From Klebsormidium nitens (lineage: Eukaryota; Plantae; Klebsormidiophyceae): a DNA stretch of 58,702 nt. The notes beneath the pieces are model-generated. The model saw only the letters and a list, made by a program, of their open reading frames with translations. It did no database searches and was not told the origin of the DNA. Location: NCBI GenBank assembly GCA_000708835.1, contig DF237499.1:1-58702 (forward strand). Reading direction: 5' to 3'. Position numbers and translations under genes: made by a program. Shown here in pieces: positions 123 through 40,300 of this stretch (the first letter of the stretch is position 1; each line of letters begins with the position of its first letter).

Positions 123-857
123 CTTGGCCGACTCCCGATTCAGTCTGGGAGATAGGGGTTTTATACCCCGACGCCCACTTTAACTTCAAGTTCAGGTGCC
201 ACTTTGTCTCCAATTGGGCCGAGCGCCCACTCCAAACAGATCCCAGCTCCTGCATGCGTTCTTTGTGCTGTTGAGGCATAGGCTTCCTCTGTCAACACTT
301 GCTCAGACAGTTTGAGCTTTACTTTCCGGTTCACATGCTCGGATCAAACAGCAGCGATTAGCTGGATCGCACATCACGGTGAGTCTGGTGGAGGTAATTT
401 CCTTGAAGAGTACTTCACAAGCAGGGGCCCGCAGCAATATCTCTGACATACGGTGGGAGGAAGTGTTTGAGTTGCTTGTAAGCAAATTGGAAAAGGACTG
501 TAAGTACACGGGAGCGTCGAAGGTAAAACTTACCGCCATTATCTCATTCACCAATCTTTCTGAGATGGTAATTCCTGCGCTCATACCAGTTGGTTTACCA
601 AGCGCTTGCACTTTGATTGAGATATACTTAACGCAATGCAGCAGGTCAATGAGAGTTCTGATGGTGGATAGCTTGCTGATGGGGCCCCTGGATACAGGCC
701 TGGGGCCATTACATTTAGGACTGCATCTGTAGATGGAACCCAGCTCGCTATCCAAGAAAGAGTGGAGCATCCAAATCCTGCGCCCCTGATAAGCAATAGG
801 TGCTGCCTTTCTACAGACCCTATTGCCCCCAAGTTTCCCTCCCCTTGGGGTGCACCC

Positions 858-3800
858 ATGGTGGAGCCTTCAGGCCCATCGCTGCGCGACAGGTGGATGT
901 GGGAGTTTCTCTTGCAAGACCAAGCGACCCCTTATGCGGCTCTCACAATCCTGGGGGGCGCCCGCTTCCGAGCCCTCGCCCAGGACCCCGCCCTCAACCG
1001 CCTCCAGCTGCTGCGCCACCTTCAGGAGCAACTAGACAGGGGGCGCTTCGACCATGACACGCTGGCCGCGCTCGCGGGGTTACAAGCTCTGGCCGCCCGC
1101 CTCGAGGGGACCCCCGCCTGGCGCCCCGTCGTTCCGAGCCCCGAGCTCTATGGACGGGTCAAGATCGAGGTTGTGCTCCAGCATTTGCGCAAGGAGACGG
1201 CCGATTGGGCGGCGTTCGAGGAGAGCTTAAAGGAGCTGTTTCCTGAGAGCGTGCCCGACACGGAGGAGGAGCAGTGGGGGGGCCTGCAGAAAGCGCAGGA
1301 GGAGCTGTGGGCGGTGGCAGCCAAGCTGGCGCCCCCCCTGCAGGAGAAGATCGCAAAGCGGTATCCGCGCGCGCCCCTCGTGGCGGCGCTGCGCGCGTTC
1401 CTGGAAGCGGCGTGGGGGGCTGTGGGACCCCCGTATTTGCAGCTGGTGGCTGATGACATCAGCGGGGGCCGGTATAAGTTGGGTGGGGAGGAGGAGGCGG
1501 AGGCGCCGCAGGGGCTGGTGGTTACGATGAAAGAGCTGCTGGCGAGCTTCCCAGCCAAGGATGCACGGCGAGGTGGGGCATCCACGATCTGGATTCTTGT
1601 CTTGGTCGTTGGCTGATGTGTCAACTTTTATCTGAGCACTCACTGCATTCCCATAGTATCCAAGGGCATGCATGTTTGTGACTAATTCCCCCCCATGCGT
1701 TCAGAACCCTAAAACCATTAAATGCCCAGAATGAAATCAGAAAGTGCCCTTCGCTTGCTCCGAATCCTATTTGTGAAGCATAAGATAGATCTGTCCATCT
1801 TTTCCTTTGCCACCCATCAAACCCTAAATCTGTCAACTAGAATCGCATCGGACCTCTCTTTCAGCATCTGCTTCAGAACCCTAACTCCTCAATAAGCATC
1901 AACCCTTTAGTATATTTGTGCCTACCCCCAAATCATGAAACTTTTAAAATCAATGCCTTGCCCCACCTTTCGGGTGTGTGCGTGTGATTTGTACTCTTCA
2001 CAATGCCCCCTGCACGTGATCCCTCGTTCTTGCGCTTACCCTAAAACCCTAATTCTGCACTATTACGTTCACACGAGCCAGATTTTTCATGTGCAGCCAC
2101 ATGCCGCCTCCTCTTGCGCTGACAAAATCCAAAACATCCTTCCTCCCCAAAACCCTAAATCCTGATACCTTGCAGCCATGGAGGTGGGCACCATTGGCAG
2201 CTCTGGTCTACAGCGCAGCAAGAGGCGCCGCTTTTCGGGCGGCGAGCCCAGCCGGGCCCCAGCAGCAGCGGAGGTTCCGACACCGGTGGAAGTTCCTGTG
2301 GCGACGGAAGTGCGCGGGGAAGTTGACGAGGCCATGCCGGACCTGCCCAGCCCCGAGCGAGAGGACGAGCCCCCCAGGTGAGAAGGAACTTCAGCTTTGT
2401 CAAGTTGGCACAAGATATGCGTTCAATAGAAAATCTGCTGTTGATGTTGGCTTCCTGACGTGCAGAGCTCAGCTTTGAGCCAGGGCGCTTGTCTTTCCCT
2501 CCCTCATGCTCGCTATAAGGGAACCTGGCTACGTCGTGACGCTGAGTATCAACATCCAAACGAAGTCAAGAGTCATTTCTGCAGTGTCATACTGCCAGAA
2601 ACAAAAGGCAGGCGGGACCCCTCTTCCCCGTTGCTCTGAGAACCGCGCCTTCTTCATTGTGCTGCGGCATCCCTCATGCCCCCCCAACCTCCTTCTCTTA
2701 GCAAACCGCTTCTCCTCCCTTCTGTCTGCCCGCAGCTCCCTGCCTGCCCCCGACGCCGCTGCTGTGATCGACGACCTTCGGGAGTCGAGCCAGGCGCTGC
2801 GCCAAATGGGCCACGACCCCCTTCCAGCGGTGCTCGCGCAAGCGGGGGGTGCCCGCTCCACTAGAAAGGCCACCCGGGCTGCCACCGCAGCGGCGGCAAA
2901 GTCCGACGGTGAGCCAGAGGGGGAGAAAGAAGCAGCGATTCCGGAGGAGGAGGAGGGGGCGGGCGAGGAGCCGAGCCCCGAGACGCTGGCGCAGCGCGCG
3001 GCGGAGCGGGGCAAGGCCAAGATGAGCCTGATGGACAGGCAGGAGGGGGCACGCACGCTGGAGGTGAGGGCCGAAAAGGGAGGGCGCAAAAAGACCGCGA
3101 TTTTTTTGCCTTCTTCTGTTTTGATAAAAGGCTTTCAGTGCCGGATGATACATCAAGAGTCGGCCGAGACCAGGCTACCACCCAGGTAGTCCGCTCGTAG
3201 AGTAATCATCGTGTTGATTGTCGGGCCCTGACTTTTGTATGAGACTGATACGTTCTGAATGACAAGAAGCACGGAATGTCCTTTGAGATGCCAGAGTTGA
3301 ATTGTTCTCAACTTCAAGGTTCTGAAGAGTTGAGCTTCTGAAGTTCTCTGAGATACTTTCCATCGAGCTTCGCGATAAGACCACCCTGACATATACTGCT
3401 CATATCGTCGGTTTCTATGTGAAGTGGCACGCCTCACAAGTCGCCCATCTCATTGCAACCTCTCTCTGTGCCCTACGGACCAGACAGGAAGAACCCACAA
3501 GGTTGGTTGTAGGTCTGGGTTTTCCTGACGCACCTTCTACGTTCGTCTGAACATTCCTTTATGCTTGTACAAAGACACACCTCTTCTGCAAAGTATCTAA
3601 AAGAACCTCAAAAGGAGCCTTTTTCGTTTGCAGTGGACCGAGGAGGAAGACCCCATCGAGTCCACGCCAGAGGCTGGCGCCCGTCCCCCCCGGCTGCCGT
3701 CCCCAGGCGCGCGCGAGCCTCCTCCCGACAAGATTCGCAAGAGCGGGGAGGGCGCACCTAAAAGCACCCTCAAGTCGGGCAAGCCGCGGCGGCCCACCAA

Positions 3801-4656
3801 CCCGTGGCGGCCGGCCGAGGAGGAGGCGCTCCTTAAGGGAGTCAGAGAGTGAGCATCGATGCGGAGTTATCAGATGGCGTGACACAGCCTTTGCGTGAAA
3901 CCGGAGTTTTGTCAGAATCTGGTAGATTACTGTCAAGCAAACACTCATTGCTGACCTTCAGGTTGATACGTCGTTGTTTCTCATCAAAAGCTGAGGCAAT
4001 CAAACGATATTGAAACGGCGGCCGTACGTGAAAGTAGACAGATTCGTAAGTAAGGGTCGGATGGACAGCAGAAGTGAGAATCGAGGTGGCCACAGTTGGT
4101 GGGCGGTCTCCTTGAAACTTCACTACTCATGTCAAAACGCGAGGGATGTCTCCTTGAAATTTTGGTCACCTGCTGCTATTTCTATCGCGCATGATGGAAA
4201 AGATGTGATGATAAAGGAAGAAGTTAGCGGTACTTTGATGGGCCATGTGCTGCAGTCGGCTTTCTTCTCTGGGCCTTGAGAAGGATATGGTGCCCGGCCA
4301 TTATCGGATGAGGTCCTTTATTGCGTTGTACTAACATGGGTGTCTTGTGCAGGTTTGGAGAGGGCAAGTGGAAAAGGATCCTCACCGAATACGCCCATGT
4401 GTTTGAACGGCGCACTGGGGTGAGTGCTGCGCACCTAAATTGGAAACGAGAATCCGCAAACATCTGGAAAGCATTCAAGCGGGCTTGCGAACCAATTTTG
4501 CAACATGTCGAGAATCAGTCCAAGTACGTGTGGCCCTGTGTTCAGCCGCCCTGATTCTTGCGGAAGAGGATGGCAACTCACCTTTTCTCTCTCCTTGTGC
4601 AGGTCGACTTGAAGGACAAGTGGAGAACTCGATCAAAAGACCAAGATTTTCAATGA
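858..4656 (+). CDS. TRF-like telomere-repeat-binding-family protein: N-terminal helical (TRFH-like) domain plus C-terminal single telobox Myb, about 526 aa
   Basis: Exons 858-1572, 2176-2377, 2736-3063, 3634-3848, 4353-4419 and 4603-4656, all GT-AG with consistent phases. The Myb reads RRPTNPWRPAEEEALLKGVRE-FGEGKWKRILTEYAHVFERRTG-VDLKDKWRT, with the telobox LKDKWR signature. Linker motifs DPLP and SLMDRQEGARTLEW resemble plant TRFL5/TRFL6-type proteins (recalled). A possible acceptor near 815 leaves the true start slightly uncertain. Confidence 0.88.
1705..2159 (+). repeat. Cluster of telo-box / telomeric (CCCTAAAA) motifs in intron 1 of the TRF-like gene
   Basis: AACCCTAAAA at 1705-1714, AAACCCTAAA at 1819-1828, GAACCCTAAC at 1876-1885, ACCCTAAAACCCTAA at 2038-2052 and AAAACCCTAAA at 2149-2159, all in the same orientation. 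Confidence 0.85.
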
Positions 4657-14700: not shown

Positions 14701-17700
14701 GCTGCGCAGCGTCACGCAGGCCACCGAGATCCACTACGACCCCGACCCCAACACCACCGTCATCGAGGAGGACCTCGAGTTTGTCACGTGAGTGCTGCGG
14801 CGCTTGGTGCGCAGTAGATCTGTGCAGGTTTCTGTACTGCCTGGTGGCTCCCTTGAATTGGACATTCTGGGGCCCTTTGAAATCTTCGATCCTTCGAAGG
14901 TTCTGCTCTGCTTGTGAGAATCTGCTGCTGATCCGACATGGTCTATTCGCACCCCCGTTACGGGGTATTGCAACCACATTTCTCCAGGTTTGCTCCCATC
15001 GATATTACTAGAGTCAGCAATTGCCTCCAACGACGTTCGCAGTTCCAGAGGACGCTTGAGCCATAGTTGGCGCTAATTCTAGTTAAAGGAAAAAGTTTCA
15101 AGAGCTTGCGGCACCACAATCTCAACGTCCGCCACTCCCCGTTCCCGCAGGTCGTACTTCGAGATGCCTGACGAGGCGGACGAGGGGTTCCGGCAGCAGT
15201 CGCCGTGGCTGCTGCGCATCGAGCTGAACCGCGAGATGATGGTGGACAAGAAGCTGAGCATGGCCGACGTGGGCCACCGCATCACGCAGGAGTTCGGGGA
15301 CGACGTCGCCGTCATCTTCTCCGACGACAACGCGGACAAGCTCATCCTGCGGATCAGGCTCATGCAGGTGAGGCTCGGGGTGACAATTTGGTTTCAGCTG
15401 GTTGATTCTTGACTGATTCGTTTTTAGGGGGAGGTAGTCGACGTCAGAAACCAATCAAATGATCCGAATGTTCCTTGAACCGGAATTTGTAGTTGATTAA
15501 TCAAGATGTTTTGGTTGGTTGATTCTAGGCGCAGACAAGTCCGAGAAGGTTATTTTCGGGAATGTTCGGTGCCCTTTGCAAATATGAAAGGTTTTGTTGA
15601 CAGAACGGCACAGCTGTTTTCCGTCAAGCACACATAACACCCTTTATCCTTCTCGTCCACTGGTAATGCTTCTTCAACACGATTCTTTTGACAGAAGGAG
15701 GGGTCTGTATTACGCATACCAAAGACTTTGAACCCTAAACACCCAGGCCGTGCCTGGCAGGTTTCGTAGGTTAAGGACGGCATGGAGATTGTGCTTCGAG
15801 ACATCCACCGAAACCTCCAGTTTGACTCAGCAGACCCTTGAACCATTTATTACGAAACGTGCAGGACCCTGAGGGCAAGGACGTGGAGGAGGACGGCATG
15901 GACGACGACGCATTCCTGCGCAAGGTGGAGAGCGAGATGCTGACGGACATGAAGCTGCGCGGGATCAACGGCATCAAGAAGGTGTTCATCCGCGAGGTCA
16001 AGAAGAACGTCTTCGACGACACCGAGGGCTTCAAGCCGCAGACGGAGTGGATGCTCGACACGGAGGGGGTCAACCTGATGGAGGTCATGTGCCACCCGGG
16101 GGTGGACCACACGCGCACCTCCAGCAACCACCTCATCGAGGTGAGGCCTCACGGCGTGTGTCTAGGGTTCTGAGGTCTGGAGTCGTGCTTTGGAGACGGT
16201 CTTTGTGTGCGTGTGTTGCTTTAAGCTGTTGGGGTAAATCATCTTTAGATTCCCACCCTCACGGGCGCTGTCTGTGGTCTGTTTTGTGGTCTTCGGTCGG
16301 ATCTCAAGATCTTGAAAGCGTACTTCTGCTCTTTTCGTTGTCAACAGCCGATGTATAGTCGCACTTTTTCGGGTTCATACAAAGCTAAATTCAACCAACG
16401 ACATCTTATTGAGGTTTATCTTAACCTTGTGCTGATTGTACTGAGTAGCCCCTCCGATTGCACGCTGGCGAGGATCTGACCTGAACCTCCGCGCCGGCTC
16501 CCTTTTCCAGATCATCGAGGTGCTGGGCATCGAGGCGGTGCGTGCGGCGCTGCTCAAGGAGCTCCGTGACGTCATCAGCTTCGACGGGAGCTACGTCAAC
16601 TACCGCCACCTGGCCATCCTTTGTGACGTCATGACGTACCGCGGGCACCTGATGTCCATCACGCGCCACGGCATCAACCGGAACGAGACGGGGCCGCTCA
16701 TGCGGTGCTCCTTCGAGGAGACGGTCGACATTTTGTTCGATGCCGCAGTGTTTGCGGAGACGGACCACTTGAGGGGAGTGTCGGAAAACATCATGCTGGG
16801 GCAACTGGCGCCGCTTGGAACAGGTGGGTTATCGATTGTAGATTGGTCTATTCACGAGCTTTATCAGACACAGCAGCGTAGATGCTTATGATGACGACTC
16901 AAGTACTCGCATTCCCGGTCTGATTATGCACCAGACGGTGCAGTGTTGAGTCGAGACCGATGGCGAAAGTTTCAATAAAACAGGTTCCTAATGTCCAGTG
17001 GTCCGTCGGAGGCCTTGCCTTATTTTGGGCGCAATCCCAGAAGTTCTCGTGTCTTTGTGTTGTCCCTTGCATACCTTAGGGCATACGTTCCTCCTGCAGG
17101 GACAGACTTCTCGAGGTAATTTTGCGCTTGCTGACTTCGGTTGGTTCTTACAGGAAGCCGATTCATCTCTGCGCTGTATGCACCTCGTCCTACCTCATTG
17201 CTCCGTTCGTGCTCACTCGCGTCTTCTTCGCCGCAGGTGACTTCGGGCTGCACCTGAACGAAGAGATGCTCAAGAACGCGGTGGAGATCAACATGACCGA
17301 CACCTACGAGTTCGGCGCCCCGGGCAGCATGACCCCGGGGATGACCCCCGCCCGCTCCCCGGGCAACTTTTACGACCCCACCATGTCTCCGTCCATGCTT
17401 CTGAGCCCTGCCGGGGACGCTTCCCCGGGCCCAACCAACCCCATGTTCTCCCCGTACTTGGCCGGCGTCGCCTTTAGCCCGCAGCCCGGTTATAGCCCCG
17501 CCTCGCCCGGATATAGCCCCTCATCTCCGGGATATAGCCCCGCTTCTCCTGGATATAGTCCGTCGTCGCCCTCTTACAGCCCCACGTCCCCATCTTATTC
17601 CCCAACGTCGCCGGCTTACTCTCCGACGTCGCCGAGCTATTCGCCGACCTCGCCGGCTTATAGCCCCACGTCGCCAAAGTATAGCCCCTCCTCCCCTGCG

Positions 17701-37300: not shown

Positions 37301-40300
37301 CTTCTCGTCCCCTTTATGCACCCTCGCTCCACGCTCGCCCTGTGCCTCTGTCCTTTTTTGTTCCCCTTCCCGTTTGGCCGGCACCCCCTCCCCTTCGCTC
37401 TTCTTCTGAAGAACTTTCTCTCCGTCCCCGCTTCCTTTCGCGGCCCGAATCTCCCCTTCTTCCTCCTCTATCTCTCCTTCTTCCTTCGGCTCGTTCCGCT
37501 CCTCTCCAACCTCGGCAACCCCCCTGCTGTCGTTTCCATTTTCCGCCGCCAGCATTGCTTCGATCTGCGCCATCCGCTCGCGCATTGCCGCCTCCTTTGC
37601 CGCCAGTTCCGCCAACGCCGCATCCCCCGGCACCCCCTCCGAAGACAACTCTCTAAGCTTCCCCTCACTCTGCACTGCCATAGCGGGTACCTCTAGAACT
37701 TCCATGCTGCCGTCCTCCGTGTCAGGGGGTGCCCCTTCCCCTTCGCTCGGCCCCCCCGCCTCCGTTTCCACCAAGTTCGCAATCGGCACCAGAGACAGCG
37801 TGCGTGGGACTCGCGCTGTCGCGGAGCGGAACTTGCGGGCGCCCGGCCGCGGTAATTCGATGTGGGGCCGGGGCGGGCCCCCTTCGCCCGGTTCTCCTTC
37901 CACCGAGGCGCTTCGCAGGGGCGTGGACGCCTCTTGGTGTGCCTCGTCCATGTGACCGGGGCCGGCCTCGGGTTGGCTGCTTCTCTCCGTTGCCTGCAGA
38001 ACCCAAGTTTCACGATTCAGGACTCAACTCGCTGAATACTCTATAATGCTTTGCTAGATCGTGATGAACAAACGCAGGCCAAAGACGCAGGGCCAAGCCG
38101 TCTCAACGATGTCATGTAGACAGCTGTCTAGATTGTGCACCGGAAAAAGCTGCCAAACCCTTGCCACCGTCAGCTGAGTTGGACTTCACACGGCGCTGTT
38201 TTGGATTGCTTCCTGCAGGCACGACGTAGGCGACTAGAAAGCTCCGTCTTTGGGGGACCAACCAGTACAGCGCTTTCCTTCACGCAACACTGAAATGGCA
38301 CGGCCATGCTATGCCACAGATCGTCCACAGAGCTGCTCTGGATCCTTAAGCCTCTAGTCGTGTCGCCGATCAACCAAGGCCCGAGCCGACAATCCAAAGT
38401 TTTCAATAGCCCCGTCGTTCGCTTGCGAAGGCCCCCGGTCCGCTCCTTACCTGGGCGCTTCTCTCGGACACGCTCTTCTTTCTGGGCATCGCTTTTCCGG
38501 ACACCGCTGCGGACTCGCTCACCTCCGGACGCTCGACGGCCTGCCGGACGGACGTCCCGGCGCCCTCGGACGCGTCAGGACCCAGCTGGGAGGAGCGCAG
38601 CGGGCCGTGGGACAGCTTCAGACGGACCTTCAGGCTGTCTGCGGACATCAATGATCAAATAGCGAATTAGCGCTAAGTGCCACTTCATTCCAAGACCGTG
38701 CTTTGCGGGGCGTCGGGGATCCGGAAAGGCTTTCAGGACGGCTAGGACCTGTCGTTTGAGCCAGCGGTTGCATACGAAAGAACCCAAAGAAGACGAAGTC
38801 TTGGCAGACAAAATTCTCAATCTCAGCGGCGCGGCACGTGTGCAACTTGAAGATAAAGTACGAGTCGATCCATGTTTTTGGCGCAGACATCAACATGATC
38901 GCGTAACCCCATTCAAGGAAGATTCCCTAGCGAGAAATGGCGCTTTGAGACAATGGATATAGAAGCACACAGCCGAAAGGAGGCGTGGATCCTCCCCATC
39001 CTCACCTTGTGTGGCGGAAGGGGCGGCCATGCCCCCCGGCCTGGGGAGCCGCACGAAAATTTTGGTTCCGTCCGTCTTGGTGGGCTCTGCCACGCTCTCG
39101 GAGCCGGCCCGCCGAATCCGAACAAGCAGGGGCACGTGGCCCTCCTCTTTCCCGGAAGGGGGGGCCGCCGCCTGAGCTTCTGAGGGGGGGGCTTCTGGTT
39201 GTGGGAGGTCGATGCCGTGCGTGGTGTACATGCGGAACAGGGTGGCGGGCCTGCCGGAGAGGGGGGGGAAAAGGGGGAAGGTTAGCGGGAGATTCAGGGG
39301 GCCGATCAGGGAAAGGGGAAGAAATGGAACCGTCTGATGCACGCCCAGGGCATGAGGAGGTCGGTCGCTGAAAGTTGTCCGTGAGATGCTCAGACTTTGG
39401 GCTTTTAGGATTTTAGGGTTTTAGGGTTTTAGGCTTGGAGAAGGACTGCAATTGTGGGCAGAAGTACAAAGTTGACGAGACACGGTGGCTGCAATGAAAG
39501 AGACGACAGAGAAGGGTGCCTTCTTTGAAAAGCAGGGCGAGCTGCATATGTAGGCTGACTCCTTAACTCAAGCCCGTGATGCAACTTACTTGTCAATGCT
39601 TAATTTACACAGCATCTCTGAATTTCTCAAAGTAACTTCCTTAAGGACGTTGTACGCACTCAGACACTCGGAATACGGATCAAGGACACGTGGGAGACTT
39701 AACGTTGGCGGTGGCTGCTGACCTGCCGTGCATCTGTTGGTCCAGCATGAAGGCCACGTGTCGGAGGCGCACGTCCCGCCAGCCCCGCCTGCTGGTCACC
39801 AGGCCTTGCAACCGGCCACCCCCCGCCACCGCGCCGCCCTCAGGGGTAGCCACCCCCTTATGCGAGGCCCACAGCCGGCTGGCGTACGTCAGCAGCTTCG
39901 TCACGACTGCGCAAAAAGGAGCTCCGAAGCCCCGATCAGTCCGCGCCAAAATCTTGGAAGTCGCGGATTGGGCTGAGTCCTCTGTAGAAGGTTCACAGAC
40001 AATGAAAGGGATCCGCTTTGTGAGAGGGCACTTGCTCTTTGGACCTCACAAACTGTACCCTGTCAAACGCTCTCGAGCTGGGAACATAACAAGAAGCTCT
40101 CGAGCCCAACTTTGATAGTTACAAAAGCCTCTTCAAGTAATCTCAGTTGTAGCAGTGCTTTTGTCCCTCCCTCGGATCAATCCCCACGCCTTGCAGGGGT
40201 GTTCTCACCTTTGGCTGGCTCGCGGTTGTCGGCCACCTTGAGTGCCACGTGGAGGGCTGCGGTAGGCCCGTCCCAGCGGTGCTCCAGGTCCATGAGCGAG

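What the first reader, a model, noticed from the sequence alone, without database searches (positions are those of the whole stretch)
858..1572. Plant-lineage TRF protein with a candidate TRFH dimerisation domain (vertebrate shelterin architecture)
Seen: exon 1 encodes an ~195-aa helical domain, followed by a long low-complexity linker and a C-terminal telobox Myb, about 526 aa in total. From memory, four ordered segments line up with the human TRF1 TRFH domain: RWMWEFL ~ GWMLDFL; RLQLLRHLQEQLDRG ~ TIYICQFLTRIAAG; RVKIEVVLQHLRKETADWAAFEESLKELF ~ LIKIQAIAVCMENGNFKEAEEVFERIF; LRAFLEAAWGAVGPPYLQLVADDI ~ IKSYVNYVLSEKSSTFLMKAAAKVV. Known: TRF1/TRF2 and Taz1 use TRFH to dimerise and recruit partners, whereas plant double-stranded telomere binders are usually described as TRB (Myb-H1/5-coiled coil) or Myb-extension TRFL proteins without TRFH. 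Inference: TRFL5/6-like proteins may be true TRFH-Myb TRF orthologues, implying a shelterin-like hub in streptophytes.
Basis: partly seen in the sequence, partly recalled or inferred. Interest (0 to 1): 0.85.

Follow-up and report, generated by a model that had tools for sequence, protein, structure and literature searches.

The report
TRFH-Myb telomere protein in Klebsormidium
An expressed gene of the alga Klebsormidium nitens encodes a telomere-repeat-binding protein whose N-terminal domain has the same fold as the TRFH dimerisation domain of human TRF1 and TRF2, so green plants have a TRF2-type protein that was long thought absent.

Summary
Window 858-4656 (+) is a six-exon gene of Klebsormidium nitens (KFL_005500010). 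Spliced transcript contigs from four studies confirm every junction, and the ORF is a complete 526 aa.

Exon 1 encodes an all-helical domain. On its own it matches nothing. A profile of 16 streptophyte homologues puts human TRF2 TRFH first in the PDB (E 0.002). One homologue scores 24.6 bits against Pfam TRF (cut-off 25).

Downstream lie a low-complexity linker, a conserved acidic iDDR-like motif (ARTLEW-TEEED) and a C-terminal telobox Myb closest to human TRF1 Myb. This is the TRF2 domain order.

A February 2026 preprint already calls the Arabidopsis TRFL7 subgroup, including the K. nitens orthologue, TRF2-like. It never mentions TRFH, so the fold assignment appears to be new.

Dimerisation and telomere binding were not tested here. 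In passing: intron 1 carries a conserved cluster of telomere-repeat motifs.

The parts
817..857 (+). Last part of the 5' UTR, after a 5' UTR intron at 379-816. An alternative donor lies near 522.
   Evidence: Spliced contigs join 378 to 817 in four runs. GT..AG ends and an in-frame stop 47 codons upstream of the ATG were checked.
858..1572 (+). CDS exon 1, residues 1-238, which holds the whole TRFH-fold domain
882..1463 (+). TRFH-fold core, residues 9-202, 11 helices
1573..2175 (+). Intron 1. It holds five AACCCTAA telo-box motifs on the + strand (1705, 1820, 1877, 2045, 2151) plus an adjacent CCCTAA at 2039.
   Evidence: Five of the window's ten sites lie here, against 0.8 expected in the whole window. 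The binomial probability is 3e-8. The motifs are conserved in a related strain while the rest of the intron has diverged.
2176..2377 (+). CDS exon 2, low-complexity linker (residues 239-306)
2736..3063 (+). CDS exon 3, linker
2764..2838 (+). Conserved linker motif of the form S..L....DPLP (residues about 316-340). Its function is unknown; it may be a partner-docking motif.
   Evidence: Conserved in at least 70% of 20 full-length family members.
3025..3063 (+). First half of the iDDR-like motif (SLMDRQEGARTLE), residues 403-415
   Evidence: The pattern A.T.[EDQ]W followed by an acidic run recurs in lycophyte, fern, liverwort, gymnosperm and monocot homologues. It fits the motif definition in preprint 10.64898/2026.01.29.702503.
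3634..3848 (+). CDS exon 4. It holds the second half of the iDDR-like motif (WTEEEDPIES, 3634-3663), a proline-rich and basic stretch, and the start of the Myb domain (from about 3799).
4353..4419 (+). CDS exon 5, the middle of the Myb domain (FGEGKWKRILTEYAHVFERRTG)
4603..4656 (+). CDS exon 6, the telobox recognition helix (VDLKDKWRT), nine further residues and the stop codon. There is no Myb extension.

Best explanation
The gene encodes the Klebsormidium nitens member of the plant TRFL7 subgroup. It is a TRF2-type duplex telomere-repeat-binding protein.

Shown here:
- Residues 9-202 adopt the TRFH fold of human TRF1 and TRF2 and are distantly but detectably homologous to it.
- The domain order is TRFH, low-complexity hinge, acidic iDDR-like motif and C-terminal telobox Myb, as in metazoan TRF2.
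- The gene is expressed and spliced as modelled.
- The family spans streptophytes, from Klebsormidium and Spirogloea through liverworts, lycophytes, ferns and a gymnosperm to monocots.

Inferred:
- The TRFH domain makes the protein a homodimer. That places two Myb domains on TTTTAGGG/TTTAGGG duplex repeats and offers a docking surface for partners.
- The iDDR-like motif restrains MRE11-RAD50-NBS1, as it does in TRF2.
- The net role is telomere-length control and end protection.

Sequence. The family profile's top five PDB hits are all TRF2 TRFH, best E 0.0019, at colinear positions (profile 143-215 against chain 144-216). The larger alignment again ranks TRF2 first, at E 0.009. Family member P0012 scores E 2.2e-5 and 24.6 bits against Pfam TRF PF08558. 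In the ESM Atlas feature search the first family-bearing neighbour is a TRF1 cluster. Independent ESM models of plant family clusters have the same shape, TM 0.65-0.73.

Other domains. The Myb matches Pfam at E 1.7e-8, and its best solved relative is human TRF1 Myb at E 1e-9. The iDDR-like motif is conserved across the family.

Expression. The gene is expressed and all junctions are confirmed.

Literature. Arabidopsis TRFL7 binds telomeric chromatin and self-interacts in yeast two-hybrid. Its mutants, combined with trfl5 or trfl11, have longer telomeres. The sole K. nitens family-2 TRFL falls in the TRFL7 subgroup.
Against: - The window protein alone has no Pfam TRF hit and no PDB sequence hit.
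- The profile hit covers only the last two or three helices and is marginal (E 0.002-0.009).
- No family member reaches Pfam's curated cut-off.
- Foldseek E-values are weak (0.008 at best) and TM-scores are about 0.5.
- The structure is predicted, not solved.
- Dimerisation, DNA binding and localisation of this protein are untested.
- Arabidopsis mutants lacking all three TRFL7 paralogues show none of the end-fusion-related phenotypes that TRF2 loss causes in humans, so the functional equivalence to TRF2 is partial at best.
Confidence: 0.78

Rival explanations
1. The fold is TRFH, but the protein works mainly as a Tbf1-like transcription or chromatin factor at short interstitial telomere-like motifs (telo-boxes) in genes, rather than at chromosome ends.
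Confidence: 0.2
2. The N-terminal domain is a generic helical bundle that resembles TRFH only by convergence or by model bias. The protein would then be a Myb factor with an unrelated plant-specific N-domain.
Confidence: 0.08
3. The domain is TRFH-like in the manner of TIN2 or Poz1: a non-dimerising scaffold that bridges other telomere proteins.
Against: The TIN2 alignment omits the first helices (model 40-195), whereas TRF1 and TRF2 align from residue 1 to 206 with higher Z. TIN2 and Poz1 carry no Myb domain. Arabidopsis TRFL7 self-interacts.
Confidence: 0.05

Closest known systems
Human TRF2 (TERF2), and TRF1
   Different: Sequence identity in the TRFH is only 10-15%. There is no basic (TRF2) or acidic (TRF1) N-terminal extension: the TRFH starts at about residue 9. 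The hinge is unrelated low-complexity sequence with its own conserved DPLP motif. No TIN2- or RAP1-binding motif was recognisable. The peptide-docking pocket was not examined.
Arabidopsis TRFL7 subgroup (TRFL7/5/11) and rice ANTHER INDEHISCENCE1, as described in bioRxiv 10.64898/2026.01.29.702503
   Same: Both have a C-terminal telobox Myb without a Myb extension, preceded by the A..T..W acidic iDDR-like motif. The preprint places the sole K. nitens family-2 TRFL in this subgroup.
   Different: The preprint argues TRF2 relatedness from Myb phylogeny, the iDDR motif and topology. It does not describe a TRFH domain; the word occurs 0 times. No Arabidopsis sequence was compared directly here, so identity of this gene with the preprint's K. 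nitens entry is inferred.
Fungal Tbf1 (S. pombe Tbf1 helical domain 6k5s; TBF1 N-terminal domain 8x6e) and Taz1
Plant TRB/SMH proteins and Myb-extension TRFL family 1 (TBP1, TRP1)
   Same: All are telobox Myb proteins that bind plant telomeric repeats.
   Different: TRBs have an N-terminal Myb, an H1/5 domain and a coiled coil. Family 1 TRFLs have a Myb extension. This protein has neither: only nine residues follow the telobox.

Membership tests
TRF family (TRFH + Myb: TRF1, TRF2) | A TRFH-fold all-helical domain | tested here: met
TRF family (TRFH + Myb: TRF1, TRF2) | Sequence membership in Pfam PF08558 (TRF) at the curated cut-off | tested here: inconclusive
   The window protein has no hit. 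The best family member scores 24.6 bits against a cut-off of 25, E 2.2e-5. Only 2 of 31 members match at all. The family profile hits TRF2 TRFH at E 0.002-0.009.
TRF family (TRFH + Myb: TRF1, TRF2) | A single C-terminal Myb/SANT domain with a telobox | tested here: met
   Pfam Myb_DNA-binding matches at E 1.7e-8. VDLKDKWR is present. The best PDB relatives are human TRF1 Myb at E 1e-9 and TRF2 Myb at E 6e-7.
TRF family (TRFH + Myb: TRF1, TRF2) | Homodimerisation through TRFH helices 1, 2 and 9 | not testable with these tools
Indirect support: the first helix (W13, E16, L19) and the last helices (L182, A185, G190, P191, L194, V197, A198) are among the most conserved positions of the family. Arabidopsis TRFL7 self-interacts in yeast two-hybrid.
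TRF family (TRFH + Myb: TRF1, TRF2) | Binding to duplex telomeric repeats and localisation at telomeres | not testable with these tools
   Evidence exists only for the Arabidopsis orthologue subgroup in the preprint: pull-down, ChIP and nuclear foci.
TRF family (TRFH + Myb: TRF1, TRF2) | A peptide-docking pocket for F/Y-x-L-x-P partners (TRF1 F142, TRF2 F120) | not tested
   No residue-level structural alignment or model coordinates were available to scripts.
Metazoan TRF2-like proteins (Myler et al. 2021, PMC8653790) | An iDDR motif (a tryptophan within an acidic run) upstream of the Myb | tested here: met
   ARTLEWTEEED lies at residues 411-421, about 50 residues before the Myb. It is conserved in liverwort, lycophyte, fern, gymnosperm and monocot homologues. 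It fits the plant motif defined in the preprint. Binding to RAD50 is untested.
Plant TRFL family 2, TRFL7 subgroup | A C-terminal telobox Myb without a Myb extension, plus the A..T..W acidic motif | tested here: met
   Nine residues follow the telobox and the motif is present. The preprint states that the sole K. nitens family-2 TRFL belongs to this subgroup. No tree was built here.

The most novel reading that the evidence does not exclude
Streptophytes, and by implication the last common ancestor of plants and animals, had a shelterin-type core. In it a dimeric TRFH-iDDR-Myb protein binds duplex repeats, docks partners on its TRFH surface and hinge motifs, and pairs with the RAP1 homologue noted elsewhere in this genome. 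In addition, the gene may sense its own product, or other telomere-repeat binders, through the conserved telo-box cluster in its first intron. That would be a feedback loop on the dosage of the telomere protein.
Probability: 0.3. Interest if true: 0.8.

Novelty: new member of a known kind. Interest (0 to 1): 0.62.

Why it matters
Papers on plant telomeres describe only the Myb domain as shared between plant telomere-binding proteins and human TRF1/TRF2 (for example PMC12315454). None of the plant telomere papers retrieved here describes a TRFH domain in a plant protein.

A 2026 preprint proposes that TRFL7 is the plant TRF2, based on an iDDR motif and Myb phylogeny. Finding a TRFH fold at the N-terminus of the same family would supply the missing third domain. 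It would strengthen the case for common descent rather than convergence. It would also give a structural explanation for the reported TRFL7 self-interaction.

Several experiments then become directly possible. Interface and docking-pocket mutants can be designed from the TRF1/TRF2 structures. Partners such as RAP1, nucleases and RAD50 can be sought with the isolated domain. The age of the shelterin core can be dated to before the split of plants and animals.

Tried and rejected
Searches that gave nothing useful:
- Single-sequence searches of exon 1 gave no TRF hit. The best Pfam match was Se-cys_synth_N at E 0.08, and the best PDB sequence match had E 1.
- Single-sequence AlphaFold2 was uninformative (pLDDT 40) and used one of the two jobs.
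- The word-indexed homologue search returned nothing with the N-terminal region of P0016. It returned only three proteins with a 15-sequence profile, apparently because low-complexity words swamped the candidate list.
- The exhaustive representative search and a search seeded with a monocot member supplied the family instead.
- P0012, the member closest to Pfam TRF, found no TRF chain in the PDB by plain phmmer.
- Rfam found nothing in the window.
- My first translation was off by one base and was corrected.

Steps I could not run:
- A profile-profile (hhalign) test against a TRFH alignment, because no tool supplied full TRFH sequences and I did not type them from memory.

Other points:
- I rejected the annotated 'partial' status of the protein. 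The extra 36 N-terminal residues in GAQ89678.1 are translated 5' UTR.

Full report
**What is there**

The window is a 58,702-base contig of the streptophyte alga Klebsormidium nitens. The protein over the finding is annotated as GAQ89678.1, 'hypothetical protein KFL_005500010, partial'.

Reading the sequence gives a six-exon coding model on the + strand: 858-1572, 2176-2377, 2736-3063, 3634-3848, 4353-4419 and 4603-4656. It translates to 526 aa and equals the annotated protein from its residue 37 onward.

In four public runs from four different studies, one contig of about 1.85 kb carries exactly these five splice joints. The same contigs also show a 5' UTR intron, 378|817. The runs are therefore transcriptomes, and the gene is expressed and spliced as modelled.

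In the spliced 5' UTR an in-frame stop lies 47 codons upstream of the ATG at 858, with no ATG in between. The 526-aa ORF is therefore complete.

**The family**

An exhaustive HMMER search of 1.84 billion representative proteins with exon 1 gave 15 hits. A second search seeded with one of these hits (P0015; source organism not recorded) added 18 more proteins, chiefly from monocots. Named sources are:
- Klebsormidium relatives and Spirogloea muscicola
- the liverworts Marchantia polymorpha (Mp1R-MYB2) and Riccia
- the lycophytes Selaginella and Diphasiastrum
- the ferns Adiantum and Ceratopteris
- the gymnosperm Taxus
- the monocots Spirodela, Colocasia, Elaeis, Phoenix, Cocos, Wolffia and Typha

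Nearly all are 'uncharacterized' or 'hypothetical'. Most full-length members carry a C-terminal Myb. Three ESM Atlas clusters of streptophyte proteins (109, 50 and 146 members) have the same predicted shape, with TM 0.65-0.73.

**Is the N-terminal domain a TRFH?**

The window protein alone hits neither Pfam TRF nor any PDB sequence. Three further lines of evidence agree with each other.

1. Sequence profile.
   - A profile of 16 family N-domains (A2) searched against all PDB sequences returns human TRF2 TRFH as its five best hits. The best E is 0.0019, and profile positions 143-215 align with chain positions 144-216.
   - The 31-sequence alignment (A4) again ranks TRF2 first, at E 0.009.
   - Family member P0012 matches Pfam PF08558 (TRF) at E 2.2e-5 and 24.6 bits, just under the 25-bit cut-off.
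2. Language-model features. In the ESM Atlas feature search the first neighbour that carries a Pfam family is a chordate TRF1 cluster (PF08558 in 96% of members), with score 0.75. This is a lead only.
3. Predicted structure.
   - AlphaFold2 on A4 gives a confident model: pLDDT 84.3, pTM 0.80, and 11 helices over residues 9-202.
   - Foldseek against the PDB gives no E of 0.001 or better. Even so, its list is almost entirely TRF1, TRF2 and TIN2 TRFH entries, aligned over 210-220 columns with TM about 0.5.

Two of them are real TRF1 segments, residues 175-201 and 240-264. Their order and terminal offsets are compatible with the structural alignment. Exact residue equivalences could not be verified.

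**The rest of the protein**

- The linker (about residues 215-470) is rich in A, E, P, R and G. It contains two blocks conserved across the family.
- The first block is a S..L....DPLP motif at residues about 316-340. Its function is unknown.
- The second block is SLMDRQEGARTLEW-TEEED at residues 403-421, which spans the exon 3/4 junction. It recurs from liverworts to monocots. It fits the plant iDDR-like motif defined in a recent preprint: invariant A and T followed by a W flanked by acidic residues.
- The Myb domain (residues 471-518, split over exons 4-6) matches Pfam at E 1.7e-8. Its closest solved relatives are human TRF1 Myb (E 1e-9), plant TBP1/TRP (about 1e-7) and TRF2 (6e-7).
- Only nine residues follow the telobox, so there is no Myb extension.

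The overall order is TRFH, hinge, iDDR-like motif and Myb, which is that of metazoan TRF2.

**What is already known**

Fulneckova et al. (bioRxiv 10.64898/2026.01.29.702503, February 2026) report the following:
- Arabidopsis TRFL7 is pulled down on telomeric DNA and binds telomeric chromatin.
- It self-interacts in yeast two-hybrid.
- Its loss together with TRFL5 or TRFL11 lengthens telomeres.
- The sole K. nitens TRFL family-2 orthologue belongs to the TRFL7 subgroup and keeps the iDDR motif.
- On these grounds they propose that TRFL7 is the plant orthologue of TRF2.

The words TRFH, AlphaFold and 'dimeri...' do not occur in that text. Searches for TRFH together with plant terms found no paper that assigns a TRFH domain to a plant protein. 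[quoted passage not shown] Myler et al. 2021 did not examine plants.

The gene family and its TRF2-like status are therefore already proposed. The TRFH fold assignment appears to be new within the literature I could search.

**Mechanism**

Most likely (confidence about 0.78 for fold and homology, lower for function), the protein dimerises through its TRFH domain and places two Myb domains on duplex telomeric repeats. It would use the TRFH surface and hinge motifs to recruit partners and the acidic motif to restrain MRN.

Only the fold, the architecture, expression and family range are shown here. Dimerisation, DNA binding and localisation are inferred from the fold and from the Arabidopsis data.

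The main functional rival is a Tbf1-like role at genic telo-boxes, and it is not exclusive of the telomeric role. Convergence of a generic helical bundle and a TIN2-like non-dimeric scaffold are both unlikely, for the reasons given under the rival explanations.

**Seen in passing**

- Intron 1 (1573-2175) holds five of the window's ten AACCCTAA sites, all on the + strand. About 0.8 are expected in the whole window, and the binomial probability is 3e-8.
- In a related strain (locus L002, exon 1 protein 95% identical) the intron has diverged to 47% identity outside the motifs, yet 36 of 40 motif positions are identical. That strain carries six + strand copies. A more distant relative (L001, 60% identical) has none in the intron.
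- A telomere-repeat binder whose own first intron carries conserved telomere-like motifs suggests feedback or co-regulation. This is untested.
I did not check it. If it holds, K. nitens would have both halves of the TRF2-RAP1 module.

**Verdict**

The novelty class is a new member of a known kind. Interest is moderate to high, because the result completes the case for a TRF2-type protein in plants and makes it testable. A preprint has already taken the headline claim of TRF2 orthology.

Noticed in passing
window 1573-2175 (intron 1); L002 1545-2150: There is a cluster of five + strand AACCCTAA telo-box motifs in the first intron of this telomere-protein gene. In a related strain the motifs are conserved (36 of 40 positions) while the rest of the intron is only 47% identical. 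A relative with 60% protein identity (L001) has none in the intron. This may mean auto-regulation or co-regulation by telomere-repeat binders.
   Followed up: partly
window 39405-39436 (- strand motif orientation): There is a short interstitial run of about four Klebsormidium-type telomere repeats (TTTTAGGA TTTTAGGG TTTTAGGG TTTTAGGC), just beyond the TAF2 region that another first-stage note covers. Single telo-boxes also lie at 15731, 25660 and 51582.
   Followed up: no
window 2764-2838: A linker motif of the form S..L....DPLP (residues about 316-340) is conserved in at least 70% of 20 full-length family members, from alga to monocots. Its function is unknown; it could be a partner-docking motif in the hinge.
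   Followed up: no
window 312-857: The 36 N-terminal residues of the annotated 'partial' protein GAQ89678.1 are translated 5' UTR. The spliced UTR (378|817, with an alternative donor near 522) has an in-frame stop upstream and no ATG before 858.
   Followed up: yes
P0014 and cluster (Ceratopteris richardii KP509_13G036700): This fern paralogue has the same N-terminal TRFH-type domain and C-terminal Myb, plus a PHD finger in the middle. It has no iDDR-like motif by my pattern. More than one plant TRFL family-2 subgroup may therefore keep the TRFH domain.
   Followed up: no
window 5764 onward: The next gene downstream on the + strand starts with [28 protein letters not shown]. In the syntenic locus L002 the corresponding gene hits Pfam RNA_pol_Rpb1_1, so it is the largest subunit of an RNA polymerase.
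   Followed up: no
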